This document shows, piece after piece, positions 4,404-18,221 of a stretch of DNA of 64,000 nucleotides. The stretch lies in sequence record ON190024.1, one strand, 5' to 3'. Every line of letters starts with the position of its first letter. Positions within the stretch are counted from its first letter, which is position 1. The position numbers and the translations under genes were made by a program. The notes beneath the pieces are model-generated. The model saw nothing but the letters and a program-made list of their open reading frames with translations, was not told where the DNA came from and ran no database searches.

Positions 4404-5840
4404 TTAAAAGCTGTAGCGATCAACGCCTACAGTTTTCAGCATGATCTTGACTGGCTCAAGCTCACCACCCAACAGTGAAGTCAGGATAGATGGGCTACAA
4501 CCCGATACCAGTGCAGTACCCGCTTCGCCAGCTTTAACCGGAACGTTGCCAAGACGACCACGAATGTTCCAGAAGACTAGTTGTGGCATTTCATAGCCAG
4601 CACGTGCGTACATAGCTTTGATTGCGTCGAAGTTTGCACGTTCGCCGCGACCGTACCAGCCACCACCAGTATTTGCTTGGTCGAATTCCATGTCGCTCAT
4701 GATAAGCAACTTAGTTGGCATTTCTTCTTGTGAAAGATTTGCACGTTTTGCACGTTCTAACAGAACGTTGAAGCACTTACCGATGTTTGTGCTCATGTCT
4801 TCGCCTGATCGATTCATGTTGTCAAGACGCTCTTTTAGTGAGCTACCGCGTAACTGGTGGAAGTGCGGATCGCTTGAGAACGAAATGAACTGATCTTTGA
4901 AGATGCCTTCATTGCGTTCAGCAACATAGATGCCAAGAGACATTGCAACTTGCTTACAAGTCACACCTGAACGATCTGTACCTGCGTTGATTGGCGTGCT
5001 CATAGAGCCAGACACGTCAACAACTGGGATGATGCGCTCATCAGAGCCTTCCATGTAGTTCGGCAGAGCCTTCCATTGCTCGTTCGCTACAGACGCATTA
5101 CCATGACTAACGCTCTTAACGACATCATATGGGAACAAGGCACCAGCGTTGATCTTCGCTTCACCTTTTTGAAGCGACTCGATGTAGCTTGTGTAACGAG
5201 CAGAAGCGTTACGACCGAATGCTTGTTGATAACGAGCCGACGCTACAGATGGCAACTTACCGAAGTCGATTGTATCCCATTCTTGCGCACACATCTTCTG
5301 TTCAACAGTGTCAGACAAAAGTGCTAGAATCTTACGCCACTGCTTCGCAGTTACGCCAAGAGACTTGATTGTGCGCTTGAACACATGACCGTTTTTGCTG
5401 TTCTCGCGTGGGAACCACTTCGCAGCGAGACTGTTCTTGTCGTTTACAATCGCATTTGACCACAATGTGATCGCGTCTTTTTCAAGACTTGTACCGAACG
5501 CAGAAATCAAGTCGTCGAAACGACCTAGTTCTGGAATTTTCGACATTACAGCACGAGCTACGTCAGGCTGCTCATTACAAAGCTTAGTGAATAGAGTACG
5601 GAAAGTACCACGTTCACCCGCACCACCGCGAACATCACGAGACCACAAAAGAATGCGTGTCGCTAGTTCTGGGTTTTCTGCAAACGCACGACCGAACAGT
5701 GTTTTAGACTGATCGTTACCACGCATAGCAGCAATACCGAAGAACAAGTTTAGACACTCGTTACCTGAAGTGCTGTGAGTAACTGCACCGTTTGCTGTAC
5801 GTGAATCGTTAGTGGTCATTGCGTTCATAAATGCTGACAT
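4404..5840 (-). CDS. DUF2828-family TROVE/Ro60-like protein with C-terminal vWA domain
   Basis: N-terminal NGAVTHSTSGNECLNLFF, WSRDVRGGAGER, GRFDDL and AAKWFPRE motifs. vWA MIDAS DVSGS plus MSDMEFD and VFWN. The Ro60/TROVE relationship is from family recall, not from a search. Confidence 0.75.
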   Translation of the reverse strand: MSAFMNAMTTNDSRTANGAVTHSTSGNECLNLFFGIAAMRGNDQSKTLFGRAFAENPELATRILLWSRDVRGGAGERGTFRTLFTKLCNEQPDVARAVMSKIPELGRFDDLISAFGTSLEKDAITLWSNAIVNDKNSLAAKWFPRENSKNGHVFKRTIKSLGVTAKQWRKILALLSDTVEQKMCAQEWDTIDFGKLPSVASARYQQAFGRNASARYTSYIESLQKGEAKINAGALFPYDVVKSVSHGNASVANEQWKALPNYMEGSDERIIPVVDVSGSMSTPINAGTDRSGVTCKQVAMSLGIYVAERNEGIFKDQFISFSSDPHFHQLRGSSLKERLDNMNRSGEDMSTNIGKCFNVLLERAKRANLSQEEMPTKLLIMSDMEFDQANTGGGWYGRGERANFDAIKAMYARAGYEMPQLVFWNIRGRLGNVPVKAGEAGTALVSGCSPSILTSLLGGELEPVKIMLKTVGVDRYSF

Positions 5841-5889
5841 TGTTTATTCCTCATATTAAATTGCTGTAAAATGTCGTTTCGATGTGATG

Positions 5890-5918
5890 ATTATACACGG
5901 ATTTGAACCCGTGTAAAC
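5890..5918 (-). promoter_or_regulatory. T4-early-type promoter of DUF2828 gene
   Basis: GTTTAC-17 nt-TATAAT on the minus strand; the spacer contains an inverted repeat. Confidence 0.85.
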
Positions 5919-5932
5919 ACTTTTTTCAATTT

Positions 5933-6247
5933 TTATCGAAAATTCATTCGAGTTAGATTCGTACCGTTTTCGTGAATCTCAACTAGCACGCGACCGCCCG
6001 TTTCATAAGACGTTCGGAGAGAACGATAACCATGCTCTTCGAAGAATGTACGAATAATAGTCGCACCACGCTTGTCTTTATCAGCAGCGTGAATGGGCAC
6101 TTTTACGATGATAGGGAAACTAGACCCCGACTCAACTGCGTGCATGAATTCTTTCTCACATTCGCTCGTGTAATGCTCGGTAAGAATTCGTTTTTCTTCT
6201 GCTTCACGAGCGTGAATTTGTTGTTTGAGTTCATTATGATTAATCAT
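5933..6247 (-). CDS. hypothetical protein
   Basis: 104-aa ORF with overlapping stop/start to its neighbour. Confidence 0.7.
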   Translation of the reverse strand: MINHNELKQQIHAREAEEKRILTEHYTSECEKEFMHAVESGSSFPIIVKVPIHAADKDKRGATIIRTFFEEHGYRSLRTSYETGGRVLVEIHENGTNLTRMNFR

Positions 6248-6579
6248 TGAAACCCCGCTTGTTTGTTTTCTCGAATTGTCAATTTGACAAAAGAATATGA
6301 GTAATCTCTCATATCACGCGGATCGCCAGAGTAATGCCCGAGCTGTGCGTCGAAGTTATGAAAACCCTCGCGTCGCATGACGCCTTTGATGAGAGACATC
6401 ATTTCATCACAACATTCATTGCGGTCAACATTCACCTGAATCGTGATTGGAAACTGAAACCCAGCAACGCCACCGATTTTACGTTCGATTGCTTTGCGCA
6501 TTTCAACTACGAAGAGTTCTTCACGAGTTGAGCGATTCTGTTTGACTTTTTGAATTAATGTATCGTATAAATTACCCAT
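6244..6579 (-). CDS. hypothetical protein
   Basis: Likely start MGNLYD at 6579, overlapping the upstream stop. Confidence 0.65.
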   Translation of the reverse strand: MGNLYDTLIQKVKQNRSTREELFVVEMRKAIERKIGGVAGFQFPITIQVNVDRNECCDEMMSLIKGVMRREGFHNFDAQLGHYSGDPRDMRDYSYSFVKLTIRENKQAGFQ

Positions 6580-6946
6580 CAATATATTCCTTAATCGGCT
6601 TAGAAAAGTGACGAATACAAGAACTGTCAAGTCGTTTACGACCATCACCATCTATATCAGGTAGTGTGTATTCGTCATTAAACGGCTGACCGCTTTCTTT
6701 CGCAATCTCATAGGCATCGGCTCGATTGAAGTATTCACCACAATAGTTGATAAACCCCTGACCGCGATCCCCGAGTTCGTTTCGATGTTCATATGTACAA
6801 CCTAGTTCTTTCAATAACTTAAAGACTGATTGCATGTTTCGACCGAAATGGCAGCTATCAGCAACAACAATGTCGCGCACTTCACCGTTCGGTAGTGTCA
6901 CTCGAATTGCATTAGCAGCAGACGATATTACATTGACGTGCGACAT
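6572..6946 (-). CDS. conserved phage hypothetical protein
   Basis: QGFINYCGEYFNRADAYEIAKESGQ resembles a common phage family of unknown function. Confidence 0.65.
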   Translation of the reverse strand: MSHVNVISSAANAIRVTLPNGEVRDIVVADSCHFGRNMQSVFKLLKELGCTYEHRNELGDRGQGFINYCGEYFNRADAYEIAKESGQPFNDEYTLPDIDGDGRKRLDSSCIRHFSKPIKEYIDG

Positions 6947-7284
6947 GTATCGTACCTCATAAAAATTGAACCGACGCGCTTATACTGACCAGAGTGAGAA
7001 AGCAACAGAGCCATTTTACTATGACCAACGGGATTGCTTGTCACTAGAACAACAGTGCGCGGAAAATTACGATGATCAATCGCATGAGAGAGAATATCAT
7101 ACCCCTCTCTACCAACATCATCACCTAGGTCATTATCCATGAATAGAGTGATGTCAGTTAGATTTGTGTGCTTGACGAAATTCATACCGTCTTCGAATGT
7201 TCGAATTACGAGTTTTTCATCATCACGTACGTAATCAGACGTGAACTTATCAATGTCGCGCTGATCATCAATCATGACGTGCAT
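6928..7284 (-). CDS. cyclic-phosphate-processing receiver-like domain protein (cREC-like)
   Basis: IDDQR ... MDNDLG ... GYDIL ... TSNPVG pattern of the stand-alone divergent receiver family linked to RNA repair. Confidence 0.7.
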   Translation of the reverse strand: MHVMIDDQRDIDKFTSDYVRDDEKLVIRTFEDGMNFVKHTNLTDITLFMDNDLGDDVGREGYDILSHAIDHRNFPRTVVLVTSNPVGHSKMALLLSHSGQYKRVGSIFMRYDTCRTSM

Positions 7285-7316
7285 AATATTTCTCTTTCGT
7301 TAGTGTTGATAAATAC

Positions 7317-8291: not shown

Positions 8292-8600
8292 TATTCGTTA
8301 GATTTCTTTGTTACTTGTCTTGCTACGCCAACAGCAGCAGCACCAGCAGCTACTTTAGCACCTGTTTTTGCCGNNNNNNNNNNNNNNNNNNNNNNNNNNN
8401 NNNNNNNNNNNNNNNNNNNNNNNNNNNNNNNNNNNNNNNNNNNNNNNNNNNNNNNNNNNNNNNNNNNNNNNNNACCGCGCCCTTCACGCGCATGAGATTT
8501 TTGATGAATGTTTTTCATTATTCGTTAGATTTCTTTGTTACTTGTCTTGCTACGCCAACAGCAGCAGCACCAGCAGCTACTTTAGCACCTGTTTTTGCCG
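8247..8600. other. assembly gap (100 N) flanked by an exact 127-bp duplication
   Basis: 8247-8373 is identical to 8474-8600. Confidence 0.9.
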
Positions 8601-9226: not shown

Positions 9227-9472
9227 AGACATTCGAGAATTGTTTTATCGTCTTTCCTTAAATCTCAATTGACTATCTCGATGTTTCTCATCAAGAGAAT
9301 ACCCATGATTCGGCATGAGACCTATTTCGTTTAACAGTACGAACACCGTCTTAATGGTCATTTCCTACCACGAGAATGCGACAGGCTCACGTCATCACTG
9401 AGAAAGCAGCTAGTGCGCCTCATTACTATTAAAGTTTGCTTCTTTGATTAGTAATATTGCTGTACAATGTCT
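9227..9472 (-). ncRNA. candidate ncRNA B1 (246 nt, end-paired, CAGCAA motif)
   Basis: Terminal helix AGACATT/AATGTCT; paralogous to 11502-11715 with a covarying hairpin. Confidence 0.65.
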
Positions 9473-9483: not shown

Positions 9484-9572
9484 TGGCGGAGATACTGGGA
9501 ATCGAACCCAGAGAACGCTATTAACGTCCGACACCTTAGCAGGGTGCTGTCATACCTTTAGACCATATCTCC
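9484..9572 (-). tRNA. tRNA-Ser(GCT)
   Basis: Cloverleaf with long variable arm, loop CTGCTAA, encoded CCA. Confidence 0.95.
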
Positions 9573-9577
9573 GTAGA

Positions 9578-9757
9578 TCATTTCTTACCACGCTCTGCTT
9601 TGCTAATCTCGACAGCAGCGATTTGCGCGTTGGCTTCTTTCTCAGTGTCATGAGTACCAAGTACTCGACCTTTAGATGAAAGAGCAACCCATTTGTCGCC
9701 ACGCTTCTCGACTTTCTCAACAAGCTTGTGGTATTCATCAAAAGTTTTAAGTTTCAT
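9578..9757 (-). CDS. 59-aa late protein, possible internal head protein
   Basis: Manual translation MKLKTFDEYHKLVEKVEKRGDKWVALSSKGRVLGTHDTEKEANAQIAAVEISKAERGKK; perfect TATAAATA at 9783-9790. Confidence 0.7.
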   Translation of the reverse strand: MKLKTFDEYHKLVEKVEKRGDKWVALSSKGRVLGTHDTEKEANAQIAAVEISKAERGKK

Positions 9758-9782
9758 TTGTCATCCCTCAGTTAGTTTATTG

Positions 9783-9790
9783 TATTTATA
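9783..9790 (-). promoter_or_regulatory. T4 late promoter TATAAATA
   Basis: Exact consensus upstream of 9757. Confidence 0.8.
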
Positions 9791-10013
9791 ACTGAACGAC
9801 TTTTAAACAGTGGCATGCTGCTCTCATGCTCAGACACATATTTGCTCTTATTGCAGGCGTGTGCCACGCGCAGCGCAGATCCCTTTTGATAATTTAATGA
9901 CCAGCGGGACTCTTAGCAGGTCTTACACATAGCCTTTCAGCTATATCTTCTTTTAAGACCATAGTGTCGTACGGTCTAATCACTCTCTTTCGATTCGCGT
10001 TGCTAAGTGAATT

Positions 10014-10090
10014 TGGTGCCCAACCCGAGATTCGAACTCGGATCATCTAGTGTTTGAAACTAGCGCCTCTGCCAATTGGACTAGTTGGGC
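10014..10090 (-). tRNA. tRNA-Leu(CAA)
   Basis: Cloverleaf, loop TTCAAAC, CCA. Confidence 0.92.
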
Positions 10091-10205
10091 TTGAATGAGC
10101 TGCCGCAACTCTTTAATCCCTAACGCCTGTCAGCTTTCGCCCGGCTGAGACCGTTTTCAACGGCGGTAGTCTAGCTTCGTGTAGAACGCGGCTTATGCTA
10201 GAGTT

Positions 10206-10282
10206 TGGTACGCACGGGCGGATTCGAACCGCCATCCCTGAGATTTTAAGCCTCATGCCTCTGCCAATTGGACCACGTGCGC
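10206..10282 (-). tRNA. tRNA-Leu(TAA)
   Basis: Cloverleaf, loop CTTAAAA, CCA. Confidence 0.92.
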
Positions 10283-10284
10283 AG

Positions 10285-10358
10285 TGGAGCCCGAACAGAG
10301 AATCGAACTCTGACCGCGGGATTTGCAATCCCTCATACTTCCATTATACGATTCGGGC
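10285..10358 (-). tRNA. tRNA-Cys(GCA)
   Basis: Cloverleaf, loop TTGCAAA, U73-CCA. Confidence 0.92.
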
Positions 10359-10461
10359 AATATGTTAGTGCATTGCATGAGCTACTGGCGATCTTAATGG
10401 GTATTTCAAGCATTCAGAATTCCCATGCGCTACTACAATGCTTTTTTCGCTAAATGCACTT

Positions 10462-10539
10462 TGGGGTGACAGACGGGGATCGAACCCGCATCTTCCGGAA
10501 TCACAACCCGGGGGTATTTCCACTTCACCCACTGCCACA
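10462..10539 (-). tRNA. tRNA-His(GTG)
   Basis: Cloverleaf, loop TTGTGAT, C73; the genomic -1 base reads T rather than G. Confidence 0.88.
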
Positions 10540-10592
10540 CCAAAGTACACTTTGGGATGTTTACGACATCAAACGAATGCGCTCCCTGTGCA

Positions 10593-10929: not shown

Positions 10930-10934
10930 AAAAT

Positions 10935-11852: not shown

Positions 11853-11929
11853 GTTGAAAAGAATTCGATCCATGAGCTATTGCGTAGAAGATGGTAGTAA
11901 AGAGACTCTACACTCATGTGATCGAAATT

Positions 11930-12004
11930 TGGTGGACACGCAGGGAGTCGAACCCTATCTTCCTCATTGCAAGTGAGGCGCTTTCCCAATTAAGCTAACG
12001 GCCC
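11930..12004 (-). tRNA. tRNA-Ala(TGC), irregular acceptor stem
   Basis: Loop CTTGCAA and G3:U70 present; the acceptor needs a bulge to pair. Confidence 0.8.
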
Positions 12005-12011
12005 ATAATTA

Positions 12012-12221
12012 TTACAACTGTGTGATTGAAATATGATCCCAGCCGTATAGACCTTCAAGCTCTTCAATCGGCTCACCAACAATATCAGAAATATATTCAG
12101 CAACTTTTGCTTCAATTTCTTCATCAGATAGTTTTTCATCAACGGAAAAAGCATCTTCGTTATTGTTGCCACCGAAATAGCCACCAATGTCATATTCACA
12201 CCATATTGAAATATAGTTCAT
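12012..12221 (-). CDS. small acidic hypothetical protein
   Basis: Start MNYISIWCEY with GAGA SD. Confidence 0.65.
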   Translation of the reverse strand: MNYISIWCEYDIGGYFGGNNNEDAFSVDEKLSDEEIEAKVAEYISDIVGEPIEELEGLYGWDHISITQL

Positions 12222-12246
12222 GTTATTCTCACAGTTGTTTAGAAAA

Positions 12247-12322
12247 TGGTGCCCTGACACGGATTTGAACCGCGAACCTGCTCATTACAAGTGAGCTGCA
12301 CTGCCAGTTGTGCTATCAGGGC
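12247..12322 (-). tRNA. tRNA-Thr(TGT)
   Basis: Cloverleaf, loop CTTGTAA, CCA. Confidence 0.95.
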
Positions 12323-12360
12323 GTTACTGAGTGTTATTACTTGCGTCGTCCAGACCAGAG

Positions 12361-12449
12361 ATACCAACTCTGAAAGGGAATCGAACCCCAAACATTTCTT
12401 TTCGTAAGAAGAATATTAGTAATTGTTTGCTGAAAACACTCTTCGGTAT
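12361..12449 (-). ncRNA. candidate small RNA: motif hairpin plus T-arm
   Basis: GAAGAGT-GTTTTCAGCAAAC...-ATTCTTC hairpin, then GGGG-TTCGATT-CCCT; ATACC/GGTAT closing. Confidence 0.55.
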
Positions 12450-12450
12450 T

Positions 12451-12524
12451 TGGCAGGGGATAACGGATTCGAACCGGTACTGCGTGAGTCAAAGTCACGT
12501 ATGCTGCCTTTACATCAATCCCCT
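12451..12524 (-). tRNA. tRNA-Gln(TTG)
   Basis: Cloverleaf, loop CTTTGAC, G73-CCA. Confidence 0.92.
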
Positions 12525-12543
12525 ATTATTCTTAAATTATCTT

Positions 12544-12619
12544 TGGCGGAACCGACGGGTTTCGAACCCGCTACCTTCTCCGTGACAGGGAGACATGCAA
12601 CCACTTACACCTCGGCTCC
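12544..12619 (-). tRNA. tRNA-Asp(GTC)
   Basis: Cloverleaf, loop CTGTCAC, CCA. Confidence 0.95.
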
Positions 12620-12842
12620 CCAAAGACAACTTAATAGTTGCTTTGTGCTCGTGCAAACCAAACACTAGCTGAACGACTTCTTGATTTCTTAGTTTTACTA
12701 CACATTCCCTCGCTAAAGGGCATCATCGTTCTTGTTTTTAACAAATGCTATGAAAGTGAGATCTTGCTATGCAGGAGGTTTCAAATCTCTGCACACAAGC
12801 AGACATCGCAACCAACGCTCTCAAACATTGTCATGGTCAAAC

Positions 12843-12917
12843 TGGCGCTCCGTGTAGGACTCGAACCTACAGCCTTTCGGTTAACAGCCGATTGCTCCAC
12901 CATTGAGCTAACGAAGC
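12843..12917 (-). tRNA. tRNA-Asn(GTT)
   Basis: Cloverleaf, loop CTGTTAA, CCA. Confidence 0.95.
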
Positions 12918-12920
12918 GTA

Positions 12921-13298
12921 TTATTTATTCGATGCGTGTTCTTCTCTGTGGCAATTCGCACATAACATGATGCATTTATCAAGCTCTGGGACAATTCTCT
13001 CCCATCGTTTGCAACCGCCACTAGCAATGCCAAAGTCTTTCCCATTCGGGTCTGTATGATGAAACTCTAATGCTTCAATGCACTTATCATACCCACATCG
13101 TTCACAGCAACCACCTTTATATTCAACCGCCCTCAATTTAGTACGGCGTCTATATGATACCACTGCTTCTTTATTCTTTTGTTTTCTCTCGTCATCTGTT
13201 CGAAATTTCAATTTCTTACCGTTGTATAAACCAGCACATCGACGACTACAGAATTTATTGTTGTGTGTTTCTGCACCACACTCTAAGCATTTATTCAT
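12921..13298 (-). CDS. small HNH endonuclease
   Basis: CxxC/CxxxC zinc motifs; CERCGY...LEFHH...KCIMLCANCHREEH. Confidence 0.8.
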   Translation of the reverse strand: MNKCLECGAETHNNKFCSRRCAGLYNGKKLKFRTDDERKQKNKEAVVSYRRRTKLRAVEYKGGCCERCGYDKCIEALEFHHTDPNGKDFGIASGGCKRWERIVPELDKCIMLCANCHREEHASNK

Positions 13299-13439
13299 CT
13301 GAATTACTCAATTAATAGTTAATAAAGTAACCCAAAGGAGAGTATAGCCCGCCACATTCGTAAGTGAATGACTCTATTACTACTTAGCAATTACATTCAA
13401 GCGTTACCAAGAACCATGCCACGTAGCTTTAAATTAAAC

Positions 13440-13497
13440 AGCAATCCTTTTCTCTTTTTCCAAATAAAAGTTTTGTATTGTTTGCTGAAAGATTGCT
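13440..13497 (-). ncRNA. candidate 58-nt end-paired RNA with CAGCAA motif
   Basis: AGCAATC-TTTCAGCAAAC...AAAAG-GATTGCT. Confidence 0.55.
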
Positions 13498-13503
13498 TAA
13501 TTC

Positions 13504-13577
13504 TGGCAGGGACATAGAGATTCGAACTCTAACGAACGGGTTTGGAATCCGTCATGCTGCCGTTACATCATGTCCCT
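13504..13577 (-). tRNA. tRNA-Trp(CCA)
   Basis: Cloverleaf, loop TTCCAAA, G73-CCA. Confidence 0.92.
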
Positions 13578-13583
13578 AAAATT

Positions 13584-13657
13584 TGGTAGCCCCAGACAGA
13601 CTCGAACTGTCAACGTGCGATTATCGGTCGCGTGTTTTACCGTTAAACTATGGAGCT
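13584..13657 (-). tRNA. tRNA-Ile(GAT)
   Basis: Cloverleaf, loop CCGATAA, CCA. Confidence 0.9.
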
Positions 13658-13721
13658 AAAGTGAGCACATTTCAGTGCTCGTGTTAATCGGTTAAGTGAC
13701 TAAACTTCCCGGTTAACTAAT

Positions 13722-13820
13722 TGGCGGAAGACTAGGGATTCGAACCCTAACATCACCTCCCGGTGACCGACGGTTTTCAAGACCGTTGCCGCTACCCAGA
13801 ATCTTTCGGCTAAGCCTTCC
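13722..13820 (-). tRNA. tRNA-Ser(TGA), enlarged D loop
   Basis: Loop CTTGAAA, long variable arm, CCA. Confidence 0.9.
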
Positions 13821-13827
13821 ATTAATT

Positions 13828-13904
13828 TGGTTGCGTGGGGCTGGATTCGAACCAGCGTTCTCCGGCTTATGAGACCGACGAGATGACCACTTCTCTACCC
13901 CGCA
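13828..13904 (-). tRNA. tRNA-Met(CAT), initiator-like
   Basis: Resembles bacterial tRNA-fMet body (GCGGGG...CCCC-CGCAACCA); loop CTCATAA. Confidence 0.88.
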
Positions 13905-13913
13905 ATTATTCAA

Positions 13914-14001
13914 CAGCTTGCGTTCTTTGGTCTGTTTATCGCTGTCTGAACTGAGTTCGCCGAGCGATCAATAGATTAAGTTAAATTGCAGTATGCAAGC
14001 T
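13914..14001 (-). ncRNA. candidate end-paired RNA with CTGCAA motif variant
   Basis: AGCTTGC-ATACTGCAAT...ATCGCT/AGCGAT hairpin...AAAGAAC-GCAAGCT. Confidence 0.5.
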
Positions 14002-14006
14002 AAATT

Positions 14007-14092
14007 TGGTGGAGCGTAGAGGAATCGAACCTCTCTTCCCATTACGGGACACGGATTTACAGTCCGCTGCGCCACCTTGGCGCATACGCTCC
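14007..14092 (-). tRNA. tRNA-Tyr(GTA)
   Basis: Loop CTGTAAA, variable arm, CCA. Confidence 0.92.
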
Positions 14093-14098
14093 GGAATT

Positions 14099-14172
14099 TG
14101 GTACTCGATACGGGAGTCGAACCCGTCCTACTTCCTTGAAAGGGAAGTGACCTACCGATAGTCGAATCGAGC
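14099..14172 (-). tRNA. tRNA-Glu(TTC)
   Basis: Cloverleaf, loop CTTTCAA, CCA. Confidence 0.92.
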
Positions 14173-14235
14173 ATTAAATTGTATATTGATTTGCAAGCTA
14201 ATCAACTCGCAAAGCGATACACAATGTATCTAATT

Positions 14236-14312
14236 TGGTACGCCGCCCTGGACTCGAACCAGACACCTGAGAGTTAAAAGCTCCCTGCTCTTCCATGATG
14301 AGCTACCGACGC
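14236..14312 (-). tRNA. tRNA-Lys(TTT) copy 1
   Basis: Loop CTTTTAA, CCA. Confidence 0.9.
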
Positions 14313-14323
14313 ATTATAAAATC

Positions 14324-14398
14324 TGGTGGGTCGCATGAGATTCGAACTCACACCGGTCTGGTTAAAAGCCAGATGTACTACCGTTATACGAACGACCC
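14324..14398 (-). tRNA. tRNA-Lys(TTT) copy 2
   Basis: Loop CTTTTAA, CCA; body unrelated to copy 1. Confidence 0.92.
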
Positions 14399-14404
14399 AG
14401 AATG

Positions 14405-14479
14405 TGGTGCACCCCCTCGGAATCGAACCGAGCACTGCGGGACTTCAATCCGCCGCTTTTCCTGATAAGCTAAGGGTGC
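14405..14479 (-). tRNA. tRNA-Phe(GAA)
   Basis: Loop TTGAAGT, CCA. Confidence 0.88.
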
Positions 14480-14480
14480 A

Positions 14481-14557
14481 TGGTACGCATGAAGAGATTC
14501 GAACTCTTATCATTCGGCTTCTAAGACCGACGCCTCTGCCAATTGGGCTACATGCGC
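14481..14557 (-). tRNA. tRNA-Leu(TAG)
   Basis: Loop CTTAGAA, CCA. Confidence 0.92.
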
Positions 14558-14584
14558 ATTAAATTTTGTAAACTTCTTTTCTTC

Positions 14585-14614
14585 ATTGTACATGATGTTT
14601 ATATCGTTGTAAAC
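14585..14614 (-). promoter_or_regulatory. early-type promoter inside the tRNA cluster
   Basis: GTTTAC(A)...TACAAT with upstream A-tract; GATGTTTA/TAAACATC inverted repeat overlaps it. Confidence 0.7.
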
Positions 14615-14779
14615 ATCTTTTTTTGAATTTATTTTGAAGAACTTAACGTTTTCATTTTTCTATGTGTTAATCTTAACACTCGATCAAGACATCTTAAACA
14701 CTAATTTGTGAAAAAGTTCGTTAAATTCTATCATCACGACAGTACTTAACGAGATACGGTCCTAAGCGTATCAAATCAA

Positions 14780-14907
14780 TTCAGAATGGTGAGACTTGAA
14801 CTCACTTCGAGTAATAGCGTAAACTAACAGTTGTTGCCAGAGGCTATCAATTATTCTCTACCGAGTATGTTGCAACTCTGCATTTCCCCATTTCTAGGCA
14901 TTCTGAA
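14780..14907 (-). ncRNA. tRNA-like element without CCA
   Basis: TTCAGAATG/CATTCTGAA terminal helix, T-arm GTGAG-TTCAAGT-CTCAC, internal GATAGC/GCTATT hairpin. Confidence 0.5.
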
Positions 14908-14910
14908 ATA

Positions 14911-14986
14911 TGGCACCCAATACAAGATTCGAACTTGTAACCTTCGCCTTCGTAGGGCGCTGCTCTTCCAATTGAGCTAATCGGGC
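14911..14986 (-). tRNA. tRNA-Arg(ACG)
   Basis: Loop CTACGAA, CCA. Confidence 0.92.
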
Positions 14987-14994
14987 ATTAAAAC

Positions 14995-15071
14995 TGGTCC
15001 GTGACAAGCGATTCGAACGCTTAACTTCTCCGCCCCAAACGGAGTACTCTACCAGATTGAGCTAGTCACGG
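14995..15071 (-). tRNA. tRNA-Pro(TGG) copy 1
   Basis: Loop TTTGGGG, CCA. Confidence 0.92.
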
Positions 15072-15080
15072 ATTTTAAAT

Positions 15081-15154
15081 TGGTCGGGACGAAGAGACTC
15101 GAACTCTTACCACATGCTCCCAAAGCATGAACGCTGCCTTTACGCCACGTCCCG
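15081..15154 (-). tRNA. tRNA-Pro(TGG) copy 2
   Basis: Loop TTTGGGA, CCA. Confidence 0.92.
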
Positions 15155-15523
15155 TTTGTTCTTTAACTTTGTTTATCATACTCTGCATTCAAAGTACGTT
15201 AAACAAAATTTTTTTGATTTCCTTCGCCCATAAAAAAGGACGCTACGTGCGTCCTCAAGTATACTTCTATGTTATACTATTGGACTACGTTTGTGGAGAC
15301 CACCCTTGTTTCGCACACGGATTCGCTAGATACACGAATTCTGAGCGCAGAAAATCGCTGCGTAAAATCATATCAGAATGTGTATTCGAATGTGTCATGG
15401 AAACTCTCTAAACGTTAAAATAAAAATGTTTTTGTTTGTATAATAGTACTTATAACATCAAATTTGACGATTTGCGGTATTTTCGCAGAAAATTGAAAAA
15501 AACTTCAACTTTCTGCGATTTTC

Positions 15524-15769
15524 TTATCGACCTAGGTGTTTTCGCTTGTTCATTTCAACGAGGATTTCATCGTTGTAATGACGGTTCAGTTCAACATACT
15601 TCTTGTGCTGATCTGAAGTCAACTCGTTGGTGTCATTCAGATGTTTCAAGAATCCAAGAGGTTTGCGAAACGACTTGCGATACTCGTTCAGACGCTCGTC
15701 AGTTAGATTATGCAGTTGTTTCGGAGTCAGTAACGTTTTATTGATGTCAAAACTCATGTTGTACCTCAC
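15524..15769 (-). CDS. hypothetical protein
   Basis: 81-aa ORF with GAGG SD. Confidence 0.6.
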   Translation of the reverse strand: MRYNMSFDINKTLLTPKQLHNLTDERLNEYRKSFRKPLGFLKHLNDTNELTSDQHKKYVELNRHYNDEILVEMNKRKHLGR

Positions 15770-15781
15770 TTGTTATAAAAT

Positions 15782-15897
15782 TGGTAGTCGGGGCTGGATT
15801 CGAACCAGCGACCACGTGCTTAACAGGCAATTGAAGGAGTGCTGGAGCGATACTTGTCAGTATCATTCTTCGTGCTCTACCACTGAGCTACCCGACT
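15782..15897 (-). ncRNA. tRNA-shaped RNA (Asn-GTT-like) with 41-nt insertion in the anticodon stem
   Basis: Removing 15830-15870 restores a 75-nt cloverleaf with CGTGC-CTGTTAA-GCACG arm and CCA. Confidence 0.8.
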
Positions 15898-15902
15898 ATG
15901 AA

Positions 15903-16424
15903 TTATTTAACTTTGAACTTCAAATTACGCCAGTCAAAGTTTCGTTTGTTCTTTGTGTTGTAGAACGTGCCCCAATCAATAGCAATCGGACAGTTCTTAC
16001 TACCTACACGAGCGATAAAGACATCGTGAGTCTCGCTGTAACGCTCTCTAAGCTCTTTTAAACGCTTATCGTAGTTAGCGATATACTCTGCACACGCTTT
16101 GTTGTAAGCTGCTTTAGAGAAGCGTTCGTCACTCGAAAATACATTACCCAGATAAGGTCGAATAACACGAACTCGTTCTTTAGACCAACCCATACTAAAG
16201 CTGTTTTCAATCTCACCTGAGATTTCACCAGTCTTCTTACATCTAGCAAGAATGACCCAGCAACGTTCACGCCGAAAATCTTTTCGTACGTACACGTTAA
16301 CGTGCTTGTCAATGTACTCTTGATAACGAGCGTTATACTCAGCACGCAGTTTATTGCGCACTTCAGGCGACATTGCAGCCCGTTCTTCTTTCGAAAACGC
16401 TTGTGCGAATTTCAATGGTTTCAT
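15903..16424 (-). CDS. hypothetical protein
   Basis: Start MKPLKF with GAGG SD; the upstream ATG in the ORF track lies inside a structured RNA. Confidence 0.7.
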   Translation of the reverse strand: MKPLKFAQAFSKEERAAMSPEVRNKLRAEYNARYQEYIDKHVNVYVRKDFRRERCWVILARCKKTGEISGEIENSFSMGWSKERVRVIRPYLGNVFSSDERFSKAAYNKACAEYIANYDKRLKELRERYSETHDVFIARVGSKNCPIAIDWGTFYNTKNKRNFDWRNLKFKVK

Positions 16425-16437
16425 TATAATTTCCTCT

Positions 16438-16677
16438 TGGCGCCGCTCGTGTGAATCGAACACACGTCAAACACAACACCTCGTCCACCCAATTAGAGTT
16501 TCGAAGTAAGAGCTAATCAGCATTTCGGAGCAGTCGAGCGTTATTTCTACGAGTGAGCTTTCGACAACTCACACGCACTTTCTACCCGGTCCCAGTGATT
16601 CGGTACCAACGCAGGTTGCGAACCTACGTCTGCACTAATGCTGGGAAAACACTGCGTATTGTACACCAGTTAGCGGC
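16438..16677 (-). ncRNA. 240-nt RNA with tRNA-like acceptor/T-arm and CCA end
   Basis: 5' GCCGCT pairs with 3' AGCGGC-G-CCA; T-arm CGTGTG-TTCGATT-CACACG; several internal hairpins. Confidence 0.7.
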
Positions 16678-16679
16678 AT

Positions 16680-16910
16680 TTAAAGATAGCTATCAAAGAC
16701 AGCATCATCAACTTCTTCAATATTGATGTCAGCGTAACACTCATTCGCAATTGCTTGAATTTCATCTATTGAAACTGTACCTGCGTACAATACAACAGCG
16801 TCGTTCGGAATCACGACATCACACATGTATTTGTTAAACATTGCAGTTCTGAAATCAGAATCAACAGAGTAACCGTGCATTGATGTGATAACTAGCAATT
16901 TATGTGACAT
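16680..16910 (-). CDS. hypothetical protein
   Basis: 76-aa ORF with GAGG SD under an early promoter. Confidence 0.65.
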   Translation of the reverse strand: MSHKLLVITSMHGYSVDSDFRTAMFNKYMCDVVIPNDAVVLYAGTVSIDEIQAIANECYADINIEEVDDAVFDSYL

Positions 16911-16940
16911 AATGTTTTCCTCGTGTAGTTGATAATGTGT

Positions 16941-16969
16941 ATACTACACGTTGATGAAACGCCTGTCAA
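16941..16969 (-). promoter_or_regulatory. sigma70-type early promoter
   Basis: TTGACA-17 nt-TAGTAT with A-rich upstream element. Confidence 0.8.
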
Positions 16970-16989
16970 CAACTTTTTCAAATTATTTT

Positions 16990-17066
16990 TGGTAGCCCCT
17001 CTCGGATTCGAACCGAGAACCTGACGATTATGAGTCGTCTGCTACTACCGTTACAGCTAAGGGGCT
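16990..17066 (-). tRNA. tRNA-CAT (probably Ile2, lysidine-type)
   Basis: Body resembles enterobacterial tRNA-Ile2 (GCCCCTTAGC...CGACTCATAATCG...GGGGC); CCA. Confidence 0.85.
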
Positions 17067-17433: not shown

Positions 17434-17447
17434 AAAACCTCGAAAAT

Positions 17448-17567
17448 TGGTGGAGAGTGATGGATTTGAACCACCGACCAAAAGATTTACCAGTTAAGGT
17501 TTGCAGCATGAATGCTTGTCAGTATTCTTTAACATTCTTTTGCTCTACCAGACTGAGCTAACTCTCC
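17448..17567 (-). ncRNA. tRNA-shaped RNA with expanded anticodon arm, CCA end
   Basis: GGAGAGT acceptor, D arm, AAAGA/TCTTT stem, insertion with GAATACT-GACA-AGCATTC-ATGCTGCAAAC, T arm, A-CCA. Confidence 0.8.
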
Positions 17568-17572
17568 ATTGT

Positions 17573-17683
17573 ATTACTACTTTGTTTCGCTTGTCAGGGC
17601 GTCGAAACGCTACCTAACCAAGGATTCGAACCTTTTAACCAACACCTCGCGAAAATTATTTTTCTCGTTGGCAAAGTAGTAAT
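17573..17683 (-). ncRNA. candidate ncRNA with 12-bp terminal helix and T-loop hairpin
   Basis: ATTACTACTTTG/CAAAGTAGTAAT; AAGG-TTCGAAT-CCTT; GCGT-TTCG-ACGC. Confidence 0.55.
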
Positions 17684-17690
17684 GTAAAAA

Positions 17691-17828
17691 CATATAGTTG
17701 CGGGTGCAGGATTCGAACCTACATCACGATCTTATGAATGATATGCGAAATTGATTGCCGTACAGATTCTTATCAGAATCAGTTTTGTGCTACGTGTGCT
17801 ACCACTTACACCAACCCGCAACTATATG
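17691..17828 (-). ncRNA. tRNA-shaped RNA with insertion and 15-bp extended acceptor, no CCA
   Basis: CATATAGTTGCGGGT/ACCCGCAACTATATG; insertion GATTCT-GATA-AGAATC-TGTACGGCAATC. Confidence 0.75.
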
Positions 17829-18074
17829 CTTTCGGGATGCTTACGCAGGTTCTTCTCTACGTAAGCACAGATCCTCAATGTATATTTTGCCTTAGCTAAT
17901 CACAACACAACCCAATATCGTGCGCTTTAATTACGGGATTGATGACCCGTTCGCATGTGATTAGCGTAAAAGTATGATTACGCACCTTTTCTTCTTCAAT
18001 GTCCAAGGCAAAGAGGACTATGAATACTAGTGCGAGAAGATATACAATCAAATTGCTCACCTCGCTTAATAAGT

Positions 18075-18221
18075 GAGAGTACATTGGTCGAGTGTAACGG
18101 AATCGAACCGTTCCCACGATCTCCCTATGATATGCGTAAATTGGTTGCTGAATATAATCATGTCTGATTACAGTATGCTACGTGTGCTGCCACTACACCA
18201 ACACTCGACCAATGTACTCTC
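18075..18221 (-). ncRNA. tRNA-shaped RNA with insertion and 21-bp extended acceptor, no CCA
   Basis: GAGAGTACATTGGTCGAGTGT/ACACTCGACCAATGTACTCTC; insertion TAATCA-GACA-TGATTA-TATTCAGCAACC; paralog of 17691-17828. Confidence 0.75.

What the first reader, a model, noticed from the sequence alone, without database searches (positions are those of the whole stretch)
4404..18221. Candidate phage Ro60-like/Y-like RNP system: ten RNAs share one helix-anchored motif in fixed register
Seen in sequence: minus-strand motif NG-N8-C[A/T/G]GCA(A) at plus coordinates 5861 (CGACATTTTA-CAGCAA), 9457 (AGACATTGTA-CAGCAA), 11700 (AGACAATATA-CAGCAA), 12427 (AGAGTGTTTT-CAGCAA), 13482 (AGCAATCTTT-CAGCAA), 13986 (AGCTTGCATA-CTGCAA), 15840 (AGTATCGCTC-CAGCAC), 17501 (AGCATTCATG-CTGCAA), 17755 (AGAATCTGTA-CGGCAA) and 18145 (TGATTATATT-CAGCAA). 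In nine cases the first 6-8 nt form one strand of a helix whose sequence varies while pairing is kept. The tenth copy is in the 5' UTR of the DUF2828 TROVE/vWA gene. Established knowledge: Ro60/Rsr proteins (TROVE+vWA) bind Y RNAs at a terminal helix, and bacterial YrlA RNAs mimic tRNA. Inference: this protein binds a whole family of phage RNAs through this motif, which differs from the canonical YrlA motif. The result could be a multi-RNA RNP for RNA repair/decay, or a set of decoys against anticodon-nuclease defences.
Basis: partly seen in the sequence, partly recalled or inferred. Interest (0 to 1): 0.93.

Follow-up and report, generated by a model that had tools for sequence, protein, structure and literature searches.

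The report
Phage Ro60-like protein's partner RNAs
A KVP40-type Vibrio phage encodes a Ro60-shaped protein and at least eleven RNAs, four of them tRNA look-alikes, that share one short helix-plus-CNGCAA signature; that signature sits next to this protein's gene in hundreds of unrelated phages and has the same design as the unexplained "Class I" RNAs of social amoebae.

Summary
All ten sites exist, and an eleventh lies at 9851-9865. The CNGCAA hexamer alone is not enriched. The composite signature is: AAG, a 6-bp helix P1 that starts with G, about 3 nt, CNGCAA, then the P1 partner followed by UG. It occurs 12 times on the minus strand of 5.8-18.3 kb against about 0.8 expected, and P1 covaries.

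The module closes mini RNAs, longer RNAs and a circularly permuted tRNA-like RNA with YrlA topology. It also replaces the anticodon loop of four otherwise complete tRNA-like RNAs (KVP40's "pseudo-tRNAs"). In the protein's own 5' UTR, P1 pairs with the AUG.

The protein (DUF2828+DUF7788) folds like Ro60: the top six PDB matches are Ro60, and the MIDAS motif is intact.

In 79 distant phage loci, and in FelixO1, Moogle, Listeria, Campylobacter, Bacillus and mycobacteriophages, the module sits beside the gene on its strand. T4 and T5 stretches, which lack the gene, lack it.

Rfam's Dictyostelium Class I RNA model aligns full-length to the mini form below its threshold. Binding is inferred, not shown. 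A 2024 preprint had already noted the Ro60 fold of the Bas63 homologue and its anti-Ppl role. The RNA partner appears to be new.

The parts
4404..5840 (-). Ro60-like protein gene (478 aa; Pfam DUF2828 + DUF7788; PHROG 850 'RNA-binding protein'; = KVP40.0300)
   Evidence: Pfam hits and PHROG hit. AF2 model with the top six Foldseek PDB matches all Ro60. The MIDAS residues D275-x-S277-x-S279, T351 and D383 are invariant in 22 homologues.
5890..5917 (-). Promoter-like site TTTACA-16-TATAAT upstream of the gene
   Evidence: Best consensus match in the region, 11/12. Conserved in relatives. Function not tested.
5836..5875 (-). Module U in the gene's 5' UTR. P1 is GACATT (5870-5875) with AATGTC (5836-5841), and the partner strand contains the AUG (5838-5840). 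Motif CAGCAA is at 5861-5866 and the Shine-Dalgarno GAGG lies in the loop.
   Evidence: Second-best hit of model R2 in the whole window (21.1 bits, E 0.018) and best hit of R1.
9228..9471 (-). RNA E (~244 nt). P1 is GACATT 9466-9471 with AATGTC 9228-9233, flanked by UAA on the 5' side and UGU on the 3' side. Motif at 9457-9462. It follows tRNA-Ser and is followed by a terminator-like hairpin at 9190-9212.
   Evidence: The motif block is conserved out to K566.
9833..9865 (-). P1 is GGCACA with TGTGTC, then UG. Motif CTGCAA at 9851-9856.
   Evidence: Compensatory changes in nt-1 (GCATA/TATGT) and K566 (ACTACA/TGTAGT).
11503..11714 (-). RNA F (~212 nt), a paralogue of E. P1 is GACAAT(A) with (T)ATTGTC, then UGU. 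Motif at 11700-11705.
   Evidence: An A-rich tract precedes the 3' strand, as in other members.
12329..12441 (-). RNA G (113 nt), a circularly permuted tRNA-like RNA with YrlA topology. Order: P1 5' strand GAGTGT(T), motif 12427-12432, hairpin, T-arm, closed acceptor-like hairpin AGAG-UUGGUAU-CUCU, short D-like hairpin, P1 3' strand (A)ACACTC.
   Evidence: The acceptor hairpin covaries (AGTG/CACT in ValKK3, CTGAG/CTCAG in K566). P1 is kept in K566 as GAGTG/CACTC.
13441..13496 (-). Mini RNA H (56 nt), Class I-like. P1 is GCAATC with GATTGC, flanked by UAA and UGU. Motif at 13482-13487.
   Evidence: R2 gives 44.4 bits, E 4e-8. Rfam RF01414 aligns full-length at 27.4 bits. P1 covaries as GTAATC/GATTAC.
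13916..14000 (-). RNA I (85 nt). P1 is GCTTGC with GCAAGC, then UGU. Motif CTGCAA at 13986-13991. It has an internal hairpin.
   Evidence: Absent from K566.
15782..15897 (-). tRNA-like RNA A (116 nt, encoded CCA; KVP40 'tRNA-Pseudo-3'). Module 15839-15864 (GATAC-UGACAA-GUAUC-GCUC-CAGCAC) stands in place of the anticodon loop.
   Evidence: Rfam tRNA 49.8 bits with a ~45-nt insert.. An A-like RNA occurs in L055, an Aeh1-size contig.
17448..17567 (-). tRNA-like RNA B (120 nt, encoded CCA; 'tRNA-Pseudo-4'). Module 17501-17527 (GAAUAC-UGACAA-GCAUUC-AUG-CUGCAA).
   Evidence: Rfam tRNA 55.8 bits. The A.C mismatch in the helix is replaced by U-A in nt-1. A B-like RNA lies 500 nt after the gene in L049.
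17698..17820 (-). tRNA-like RNA C (123 nt, no encoded CCA, leader-trailer helix extends the acceptor stem to 12 bp). Module 17755-17780.
   Evidence: P1 changes from GATTC/GAATC to CAAGC/GTTTG (ValKK3) and CAAGT/GCTTG (K566), while the N position of CNGCAA reads G, T or A.
18085..18207 (-). tRNA-like RNA D (123 nt, encoded CCA, 15-bp leader-trailer helix). Module 18145-18170.
   Evidence: P1 changes from TAATC/GATTA to CTTAC/GTAAG in K566.
9484..17066 (-). tRNA gene cluster (27 ARAGORN tRNAs plus one found only by Rfam at 11933-12004) in which the module RNAs are embedded
8374..8473 (.). Assembly gap (run of N) flanked by identical 127-nt copies at 8247-8373 and 8474-8600. This is an artefact and not part of the system.

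Best explanation
The 478-aa protein is a Ro60-like ring: a TROVE-like helical repeat domain followed by a vWA domain with a complete MIDAS site. It belongs to the DUF2828/DUF7788 family. I propose that its cognate RNA ligand is a small module. The module has a 6-bp helix (P1) of free sequence whose first pair is always G-C. P1 is flanked by A-A on the 5' side and U-G on the 3' side. Its 5' strand is followed, after about 3 mostly U-rich bases, by single-stranded C-N-G-C-A-A. An A-rich tract leads into its 3' strand.

The phage places this handle on different cargo:
- bare ~35-60-nt RNAs (K, H);
- 85-245-nt RNAs (I, F, E);
- a circularly permuted tRNA-like domain (G), the same topology as bacterial YrlA;
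- four otherwise complete tRNA-like RNAs with acceptor, D and T arms, three of them with an encoded CCA. In these, P1 is capped by a UGAYAA loop and the module replaces the anticodon loop (A-D).

By analogy with Ro60 and Y RNA, the protein would hold the handle while the cargo domain recruits or blocks tRNA-recognising enzymes or nucleases. This would give a set of alternative RNPs.

A further copy lies in the protein's own 5' UTR. There P1 pairs with the start codon and encloses the Shine-Dalgarno sequence, so bound protein should shut off its own translation.

Shown here: the fold, the module, its covariation, and its genomic linkage to the gene. Inferred: binding, feedback, and the cargo's function. 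The Bas63 homologue (gp130) has been reported to counter the Ppl defence system, which points to an anti-defence role.
For: Fold: Ro60 entries (9l5y, 2i91, 1yvr, 1yvp, 9nep) are the top six Foldseek matches, full-length, probability 1.00. The MIDAS residues are invariant.

Module in the window: 12 composite hits against about 0.8 expected. All ten sites plus 9856 have P1.

Covariation on a set chosen by homology and T-arm context, not by pairing: 96.5% of cells paired against 64.6% in shuffles; 4 of 5 pairs show compensatory changes; score 0.81 against at most 0.18 for slid registers.

Linkage: 180 gene-strand hits against 59 opposite-strand in 1.26 Mb of distant DUF2828 loci, and 41/79 against 1/79 adjacent to the gene. 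For a clade-specific RNA pattern, 41/41 testable matches have the gene. Modules flank the gene in FelixO1, Moogle, Faith1, LP-064, PC14 and Tsamsa. They are absent from the T4 and T5 tRNA regions, which have no DUF2828. No protein neighbour is co-conserved.

Architecture: permuted members show P1, motif, T-arm, acceptor hairpin, D-arm and P1'. Rfam YrlA hits them weakly (38.0, 34.8 and 24.7 bits).

Against: No binding data exist for any DUF2828 protein with any of these RNAs.

Sequence searches do not connect the protein to TROVE or Ro60. The link is a fold match of a medium-confidence model (TM about 0.55, rmsd about 8 A).

The canonical Ro-binding sequence is absent.

Adjacency could reflect cis-regulation of the gene rather than a trans RNP.

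My scanner required pairing, so the 100% pairing in A3 is circular.

Many loci belong to a few clades, so the counts are not independent events.

In Dictyostelium the only protein shown to bind a Class I RNA directly is an RRM protein (PMC7919456).
Confidence: 0.7

Rival explanations
1. The module is a cis-acting mRNA element, a 5' or 3' UTR stabiliser, attenuator or processing site for the DUF2828 transcript. It would be recognised by a host factor such as an RNase or Hfq/ProQ-type protein, not by the DUF2828 protein. The copies in the tRNA cluster would be duplicates used for transcript processing.
For: In many loci the mini form starts 19-24 nt after the stop codon, or ends just before the ribosome-binding site. 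E is followed by a terminator-like hairpin. The conserved AAG and CUG flanks could be cleavage sites.
Against: Copies lie up to 12 kb from the gene inside tRNA arrays. The module is fused to tRNA-like domains in two circular permutations, exactly as Y RNAs are built. The same design makes free, abundant ~60-nt RNAs in Dictyostelium (PMC7919456). The link to the gene holds both upstream and downstream of it, and in hosts from four phyla with different RNases.
Confidence: 0.15
2. The tRNA-like RNAs A-D act on their own as decoys or substrates for anticodon nucleases or tRNA-modifying enzymes. The CNGCAA resembles a tRNA-Cys anticodon loop (CUGCAAA in B). The Ro-like protein would be unrelated or only accessory.
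For: tRNAscan calls these 'pseudo' tRNAs with anticodon GCA (PMC3468402). Acceptor, D and T arms and the CCA end are intact. The Bas63 homologue has an anti-defence phenotype.
Against: Most copies have A, G or C where the universal U33 would be. The motif is not in a 7-nt loop closed by a stem. The same motif occurs in RNAs with no tRNA-like part and in phage contigs with no tRNA within 10 kb.
Confidence: 0.08
3. A-D are decaying tRNA pseudogenes, as annotated in KVP40, and the shared hexamer is a chance or compositional feature.
For: KVP40 annotates tRNA-Pseudo-3, -4 and -5. The hexamer alone is not enriched.
Against: The inserts are conserved with compensatory helix changes across genomes only 74% identical. 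Composite enrichment is about 15-fold. An independent covariance model gives E 4e-8. Equivalent RNAs exist in Aeh1-like and other distant contigs.
Confidence: 0.02

Closest known systems
Ro60/Rsr with Y RNAs, especially bacterial YrlA (Rfam RF02553; Chen et al. 2014, PMC4201824), and Thermus phage phiLo Ro60 with Yrl1/2 (PMC12135203)
   Same: The protein is a ring-plus-vWA fold. The RNA genes lie next to the protein gene. The RNA has a terminal helix 'handle' and a cargo domain that mimics tRNA. Permuted members here have the YrlA order: helix, T-arm, closed acceptor hairpin, D-arm, helix. YrlA gives weak hits on them.
   Different: The protein family is DUF2828/DUF7788, not Pfam TROVE, and has no sequence-level match to Ro60. 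The conserved RNA element is single-stranded CNGCAA beside a helix of free sequence, not GNCGAA(N0-1)G inside the helix. There are many RNAs per genome. Un-permuted tRNA-like versions with open acceptor ends and CCA exist. There is a copy in the protein's own 5' UTR.
Dictyostelid Class I RNAs (Rfam RF01414; Aspegren 2004; Avesson 2011; Kjellin 2021, PMC7919456)
   Same: The shared features are: an AAG start; a 6-bp terminal stem of free, covarying sequence with an invariant first G paired to the C of a 3' CUG(U); a conserved ...UUACAGCAA block directly after the 5' strand, with C, C, A, A the most invariant positions; an A-rich 3' part; a length of ~55-65 nt; and tandem gene clusters. RF01414 aligns end to end with window RNA H and with L037 and L009 minis.
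   Different: The scores (27-31 bits) are below Rfam's gathering score of 41.5. The phage spacer is one base shorter. There is no DUSE promoter. Class I RNAs were reported as unique to Dictyostelia, and their only proven direct binder is the RRM protein CIBP/Rnp1A. Whether dictyostelids have a DUF2828 protein could not be tested here.
Bas63 (Escherichia phage JohannRWettstein) gp130, PhageMaP preprint 10.1101/2024.10.10.617714
   Same: It is a homologous protein (45% identity). Its Ro60-like fold has been noted. It lies next to a tRNA array. The authors guessed that some neighbouring 'tRNAs' might be Y RNAs. It has an experimental role as a counter to the Ppl defence system.
   Different: That work defined no RNA motif or RNA genes. 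In FelixO1 and Moogle, which belong to the same Ounavirinae subfamily (FelixO1 to the same genus), the partner-like RNAs are unannotated elements between the tRNAs, not the annotated tRNAs.
Stable non-tRNA RNAs in phage tRNA clusters: T4 rnaC/rnaD and T5 RNA1, RNA2, RNA3, RNAI-IV
   Same: They are small stable RNAs, some tRNA-like, embedded in and processed from tRNA operons. Their function has been unknown for decades.
   Different: T4 and T5 lack DUF2828 in the stretches examined, and their RNAs lack the module.

Membership tests
Ro60 / TROVE protein family | Toroid of HEAT-like helical repeats followed by a vWA domain | tested here: met
   The AF2 model has helices over residues 28-258, then an alpha/beta domain over 270-471. 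The six best Foldseek PDB matches are all Ro60, aligned over 506-573 columns.
Ro60 / TROVE protein family | MIDAS motif (DxSxS...T...D) in the vWA domain | tested here: met
   VVDVSGSMS at 273-281. D275, S277, S279, T351 and D383 are invariant in 22 homologues 51-82% identical to the window protein.
Ro60 / TROVE protein family | Sequence membership (Pfam TROVE PF05731, or a significant sequence match to solved Ro60) | tested here: not met
   Pfam gives only DUF2828 and DUF7788. phmmer and a profile search of PDB sequences find armadillo designs, not Ro60. NCBIfam gives nothing.
Ro60 / TROVE protein family | Binds Y-type RNA on the outer surface and RNA 3' ends in the central hole | not testable with these tools
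   Needs biochemistry or a structure.
YrlA (Rfam RF02553) | Terminal helix enclosing a permuted tRNA-like domain (T-arm, closed acceptor hairpin, D-arm) | tested here: met
   Seen in window RNA G and in L034, L036, L037, L040, L049, L051, FelixO1, Moogle and Faith1 members. A-D have the same parts but un-permuted.
YrlA (Rfam RF02553) | Reaches the family's gathering score (69 bits) | tested here: not met
   The best scores are 38.0, 34.8 and 24.7 bits on loci members. There is no hit at any window motif site at E<=5.
YrlA (Rfam RF02553) | Conserved GNCGAA(N0-1)G near the 5' end (PMC4201824) | tested here: not met
   The conserved block is CNGCAA in a loop position. CGAA occurs sporadically and is not conserved.
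YrlA (Rfam RF02553) | Encoded next to a Ro60 orthologue | tested here: met
   Next to the Ro60-like DUF2828 gene.
Dictyostelium Class I RNA (Rfam RF01414) | 6-bp terminal stem with invariant 5' G, AAG start, CUG(U) end, sequence-free and covarying | tested here: met
   Seed alignments A3 and A5: G4, C59 (C40 in A3) and G61 (G42 in A3) are invariant and five of six pairs vary on both sides. Window H has UAA-GCAAUC...GAUUGC-UGU.
Dictyostelium Class I RNA (Rfam RF01414) | Conserved 11-nt block CCUUACAGCAA next to the 5' stem strand | tested here: inconclusive
   The phage consensus is (U)U(A/U)CAGCAA with a spacer one base shorter. The positions that are invariant in Dictyostelia (U3, C6, C9, A10, A11) are also the invariant ones here (PMC7919456).
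Dictyostelium Class I RNA (Rfam RF01414) | Reaches the gathering score (41.5 bits) | tested here: not met
   27.4 bits (window H), 30.8 and 27.9 bits (L037), 28.2 bits (L009). All are full-length alignments to positions 1-56 of the model.
Dictyostelium Class I RNA (Rfam RF01414) | Dictyostelid origin with a DUSE promoter ~60 nt upstream | tested here: not met
   These are phage sequences inside polycistronic tRNA operons, or beside sigma-70-like promoters.
tRNA (Rfam RF00005) | Cloverleaf with a 7-nt anticodon loop | tested here: not met
   A and B pass the tRNA gathering score (49.8 and 55.8 bits) only by treating ~45 nt as an insertion. C and D are not recognised. ARAGORN calls none of the four. 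No 7-nt anticodon loop exists.

The most novel reading that the evidence does not exclude
The helix-plus-CNGCAA module is the universal ligand of a second, DUF2828-type branch of Ro-like RNPs that spans phages and eukaryotes. On this reading, the abundant Dictyostelium Class I RNAs would be the 'Y RNAs' of the amoebal DUF2828 protein. Those RNAs were described in 2004, were thought unique to social amoebae, and have no known mechanism. The uncharacterised DdR-21 pull-down protein DDB_G0281243 is the obvious candidate to check. Phages would then use the same handle to load tRNA-shaped cargo onto the ring, as an anti-defence device of the kind suggested by Bas63 gp130 against Ppl.
Probability: 0.4. 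Interest if true: 0.95.

Novelty: new variant of a known kind. Interest (0 to 1): 0.85.

Why it matters
Homologues of this protein (PHROG 850) were found in 711 phage records and in more than 7,000 protein clusters. These include the Felixounavirus, Pecentumvirus and Fletchervirus groups and mycobacteriophages. Only one functional report exists.

Knowing the likely RNA ligand has several uses:
- The family becomes directly testable by EMSA, RIP and mutagenesis of five bases and one helix.
- It explains the long-standing 'pseudo-tRNAs' of KVP40-like phages.
- It explains unannotated conserved gaps in phage tRNA arrays.
- It predicts a simple translational feedback loop.
- It shows one RNA handle used in two circular permutations of a tRNA-like scaffold, which bears on how Y-like RNAs evolve from tRNAs.

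If the resemblance to Dictyostelium Class I RNAs reflects a shared protein partner, it would give a mechanism to an orphan eukaryotic RNA class.

Tried and rejected
1. The hexamer alone as a signal: it is not enriched.

2. Rfam at gathering thresholds: only tRNAs are found. YrlA and Class I appear only below threshold.

3. Sequence-only PDB searches: no Ro60, only armadillo-repeat designs.

4. ARAGORN 'long tRNAs' in other DUF2828 loci: these are ordinary long-variable-arm tRNAs, not the insert type.

5. MAFFT alignment of full mini RNAs (A2): it broke the 3' strand and was unusable.

6. Model R1 with the loop cut out: too short a loop. It found the 5' UTR copy but was otherwise weak. It was replaced by R2.

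7. Loose IMG/VR pattern AAAGGATNNNTTNCAGCAA: the scan stopped at 120 rows, which were essentially all chance matches in coding DNA. None had a DUF2828 gene, so the scan was uninformative.

8. Co-conserved protein neighbours (RNaseH-like PF04308 and small ORFs): none.

9. Reaching eukaryotic DUF2828 proteins with a doubled-length query: only viral and prokaryotic hits were listed.

10. Reading B as an intron-containing tRNA-Asn, or the hairpin loop as an anticodon loop: rejected. The loop is 6 nt, position 33 varies, and nt-1's B does not keep the reading.

11. A MotA-box or promoter reading of TTGCTG on the + strand: rejected, because all the genes here are on the minus strand.

Full report
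**Source and gap.** The window is a KVP40-type Vibrio phage. It is 100% identical to phage PVA8 and 99% to KVP40 over the tested 2.6 kb. The 500 nt to its left map to KVP40 locus positions 5034-5533, and the 500 nt to its right map to 5407-5906. The two flanks therefore overlap, and 8247-8373 is identical to 8474-8600 over 127/127 bases. This is an unmerged contig overlap, not missing sequence. The second PVA8 record, which is 540 bp shorter, holds that flank sequence only once. The nearest RNA of interest ends at 9228, so the gap does not touch the finding.

**The observation.** The hexamer alone is not evidence. TTGCNG occurs 182 times in the window against 135+/-13 in shuffles, and about 19 times on the relevant strand of the region against about 13 expected. 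What is non-random is a composite:
- a helix P1 of 5-7 bp whose first base is G;
- a spacer of 2-4 nt;
- CNGCA[ACT];
- the complementary strand ending in C, followed by [TA]G.

The complementary strand lies either up to 270 nt downstream ('open') or immediately upstream across a 5-8-nt loop ('closed'). A scanner for this finds 24 hits in the window against a mean of 8.4 in 30 block shuffles. Twelve of them lie on the minus strand between 5.8 and 18.3 kb, where about 0.8 is expected.

The eleventh copy shows compensatory helix changes in nt-1 and K566. That partner strand contains the gene's AUG, and the Shine-Dalgarno sequence lies in the loop.

**Conservation.** I aligned the window with KVP40, ValKK3, VS1, nt-1 and K566, which fall to 74% DNA identity. 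C, G, C, A and the register are kept, while the N position and the helix sequence change:
- RNA C has GATTC/GAATC, CAAGC/GTTTG or CAAGT/GCTTG, with CGGCAA, CTGCAA or CAGCAA.
- RNA D changes TAATC/GATTA to CTTAC/GTAAG.
- RNA H changes GCAATC/GATTGC to GTAATC/GATTAC.

I also took 17 capped modules chosen by homology and T-arm context, not by pairing. In these, 96.5% of cells pair against 64.6% in shuffles. Four of five pairs have changes on both sides. The covariation score is 0.81, against at most 0.18 when the partner strand is slid by 1-3 columns.

**Anatomy.** Coordinates are.
- H (13441-13496) and K (9833-9865) are bare modules.
- I (13916-14000), F (11503-11714) and E (9228-9471) enclose more RNA. 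E and F are paralogues, and E is followed by a terminator-like hairpin.
- G (12329-12441) encloses a T-arm, a closed, covarying acceptor-like hairpin and a short D-like hairpin.
- A (15782-15897), B (17448-17567), C (17698-17820) and D (18085-18207) have full acceptor, D and T arms. A, B and D also encode CCA. About 45 nt stands where the anticodon loop should be, and this insert contains P1 capped by UGACAA, UGAUAA or AGACAU, then 3-4 nt, then CNGCA(A/C).

Rfam's tRNA model accepts A and B only with that insertion. KVP40 annotates such RNAs as tRNA-Pseudo-3 to -5, and tRNAscan's 'anticodon GCA' for them is the GCA of the motif.

The capped and open forms are circular permutations of one design. 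In open forms the 5' flank is AAAG and the 3' flank is UGA(Y)A. Joined together, these give exactly the UGAYAAG loop of A-D.

**The protein.** Pfam gives DUF7788 (E 1e-45) and DUF2828 (E 1e-29). PHROG 850 is labelled 'RNA-binding protein'. NCBIfam gives nothing. Sequence searches of the PDB do not reach Ro60.

An AlphaFold2 model built on 22 homologues (pLDDT 76.6, pTM 0.73) is all-helical to about residue 258 and then alpha/beta. Its six best Foldseek PDB matches are all Ro60: Thermus phage phiLo, Xenopus Ro60 with RNAs, and a 2026 cryo-EM entry. These have E 8e-8 to 3.5e-5 and 506-573 aligned columns. All later matches are isolated vWA domains. The MIDAS residues are invariant in the family alignment. 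The fold claim therefore stands, while sequence-level membership of TROVE does not.

**Linkage to the gene.** A profile scan of IMG/VR returned 80 loci with DUF2828 genes. One of them is KVP40-like. The proteins of the other 79 are 46-55% identical to the window's. About half have tRNA arrays on the same strand, and half have no tRNA within 10 kb.

'Orphan' T-arms in these loci are often preceded by AAG-N8-CNGCAA. Full read-outs show the YrlA order: P1, motif, A-rich linker, anticodon-stem strand, T-arm, closed acceptor hairpin, UA, D-arm, anticodon-stem strand, A-rich tract, P1', UGA. P1 is different in every locus.

Scanner counts over the 79 loci (1.26 Mb):

| Measure | Gene strand | Opposite strand | Shuffles |
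|---|---|---|---|
| Total hits | 180 | 59 | 34-52 |
| Loci with a hit within 400 nt of the gene | 41/79 | 1/79 | not counted |

Typically a ~55-nt mini RNA starts about 20 nt after the stop codon, with its motif 35-42 nt after it, and often two stand in tandem.

The reverse test used a clade-specific RNA pattern, GGTTCCNTACAGCAA-N30-50-GGAACCNGG. It has 45 matches in all of IMG/VR. Forty-one have the gene ending 19-417 nt upstream on the same strand. The other four have at most 404 nt of upstream sequence in the fetched stretch, which need not reach the gene when it ends ~405 nt upstream.

Cultured phages from four host phyla show the same thing:
- FelixO1 and Moogle have four modules each among the tRNAs just after the gene, one of them YrlA-like.
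- Mycobacteriophage Faith1 has three right after its 'Ro-like RNA binding protein' gene.
- Listeria LP-064 has three just before the gene.
- Campylobacter PC14 has one just before the gene.
- Bacillus Tsamsa has two before the gene.

**Independent model and controls.** I built covariance model R2 only from the IMG/VR mini forms. In the window it scores H at 44.4 bits (E 4e-8) and the 5' UTR copy at 21.1 bits (E 0.018). These are the two best hits in 128 kb. It finds 10 copies beside the gene in FelixO1, Moogle, LP-064, Tsamsa and PC14 at E<=0.016. It finds none at E<=1 in 48 kb of T4 and T5 tRNA regions. Those two stretches also show no DUF2828 by tblastn and only chance-level scanner hits. 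No protein-coding neighbour of the window gene is co-conserved with DUF2828 elsewhere.

**Relation to known RNAs.** Rfam YrlA gives sub-threshold hits on the permuted members, at 38.0, 34.8 and 24.7 bits against a gathering score of 69. Its consensus shows the same domain order. The YrlA signature GNCGAA(N0-1)G (PMC4201824) is replaced here by CNGCAA, which sits in a loop rather than in the helix.

Unexpectedly, Rfam's Dictyostelium Class I RNA model (RF01414) aligns end to end with the mini forms. It scores 27.4 bits on window H (E 8e-4 in the local search), 30.8 and 27.9 bits in L037, and 28.2 bits in L009, against a gathering score of 41.5. The published hallmarks of Class I RNAs are an AAG start, a 6-bp stem of free sequence with an invariant first G pairing to the C of a terminal CUGU, and an adjacent 11-nt CCUUACAGCAA with U3, C6, C9, A10 and A11 nearly invariant. 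They are also ~60 nt long and occur in clustered genes (PMC7919456). These are the features of the phage module. That paper reports Class I RNAs as unique to Dictyostelia.

A DdR-21 pull-down found CIBP/Rnp1A (an RRM protein and the direct binder), GuaB, NdkC and the uncharacterised DDB_G0281243 (10.1101/2020.04.05.026054). I could not determine whether dictyostelids encode a DUF2828 protein. In the searchable literature the domain appears in plant papers and one tardigrade paper. My recollection is that Pfam describes it as found in eukaryotes and viruses.

**Prior art on the protein.** The PhageMaP preprint (10.1101/2024.10.10.617714) reports three things about Bas63 gp130:
- It is structurally similar to Ro60.
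- It lies upstream of the tRNA genes, some of which the authors suggest may be Y RNAs.
- Its deletion sensitises the phage to the Ppl defence system.

Bas63 is phage JohannRWettstein, whose homologue is 45% identical to the window protein. SEA-PHAGES annotations already say 'Ro-like RNA binding protein'. I found no description of the RNA module, of its link to DUF2828, or of a link to Class I RNAs.

**Mechanism.** The best-supported reading is a Ro60/Y-RNA-type RNP in which the protein grips the P1+CNGCAA handle. The cargo is nothing, an unknown domain, or a tRNA-shaped domain in either permutation, and it determines what the particle engages. The 5' UTR copy gives autogenous translational repression. 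A promoter-like TTTACA-16-TATAAT sits just upstream of that copy.

What is shown: the fold, the module, the covariation and the genomic linkage. What is inferred: binding, feedback, cargo function and the anti-defence role. The main rival is a cis-regulatory or processing element read by another factor. It is weakened by three facts: copies lie up to 12 kb from the gene, the module is fused to tRNA-like domains, and the same design exists as free RNAs in amoebae.

**Verdict.** This is a new variant of the Ro60-Y RNA kind, with a possible and testable bridge to an orphan eukaryotic RNA class.

Noticed in passing
window 8247-8600: The N run 8374-8473 is flanked by two identical 127-nt copies. 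KVP40 has the sequence once, and the second PVA8 record, which is 540 bp shorter, holds the flank sequence only once. This is an unmerged contig overlap in this assembly.
   Followed up: yes
window 7999-8015, 14789-14805, 16449-16465 (minus strand): Three further T-arm-like hairpins lie outside any called tRNA and have no clear CNGCAA module. One closes a mini acceptor+T-arm element just after ORF 8061-8291. One sits in the 350-nt gap between tRNA-Leu and tRNA-Arg, near a CTGGCAA. One lies at the start of ORF 15903-16463, where there is a weak tmRNA-like Rfam hit. All are conserved in relatives.
   Followed up: partly
L001 (KVP40) 14383-14495: KVP40, nt-1 and ValKK3 carry a fifth capped tRNA-like RNA ('tRNA-Pseudo-5', GAAGUC-UGAUAA-GAUUUC-AUU-CUGCAU). 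The window (PVA8) lacks it between B and C.
   Followed up: partly
window 9228-9471 and 11503-11714: RNAs E and F are paralogues. They share a 3' domain (...GATAGTCAA...AAAGACGA.AAAAC...) of unknown fold. E is followed by a terminator-like hairpin at 9190-9212.
   Followed up: partly
window 5894-5915: The spacer of the promoter-like site upstream of the Ro-like gene is itself a T-arm-like hairpin (CACGG-GUUCAAAU-CCGUG). It partly covaries in relatives.
   Followed up: no
window 18873-19328 (minus): An Acb1 anti-CBASS phosphodiesterase homologue (Pfam E 1.7e-46; the T4 57B position) lies just upstream of the RNA region.
   Followed up: no
window 3828-4358 (minus): An RNaseH-like PF04308 protein lies directly downstream of the Ro-like gene. 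It is not co-conserved with DUF2828 in other loci: only 1 of the 85 searched (L007-L092, T4 locus excluded).
   Followed up: partly
L089 (Listeria phage LP-064) 5855-7066: An RtcB-like RNA ligase gene lies 1.3 kb downstream of the DUF2828 gene. This recalls the bacterial rsr-yrlBA-rtcBA arrangement.
   Followed up: no
L091 (Bacillus phage Tsamsa) about 2500-2820: About 320 nt of noncoding, GC-richer sequence lies between the two modules upstream of the gene. It could be another structured RNA.
   Followed up: no
L037 8605-9054; L072 18443; L075 20038: L037 carries a phage-encoded tmRNA (Rfam 75 bits). Two other DUF2828 contigs have tRNAs that ARAGORN labels Pyl, which suggests amber-suppressor-type anticodons.
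   Followed up: no
L086 (T4) 4909-5172; L254 (T5) 8285-11950: T4 rnaC/rnaD and eight T5 'stable RNAs of unknown function', some tRNA-like, sit in tRNA clusters like the RNAs here. They lack the module, and these two stretches show no DUF2828.
   Followed up: partly
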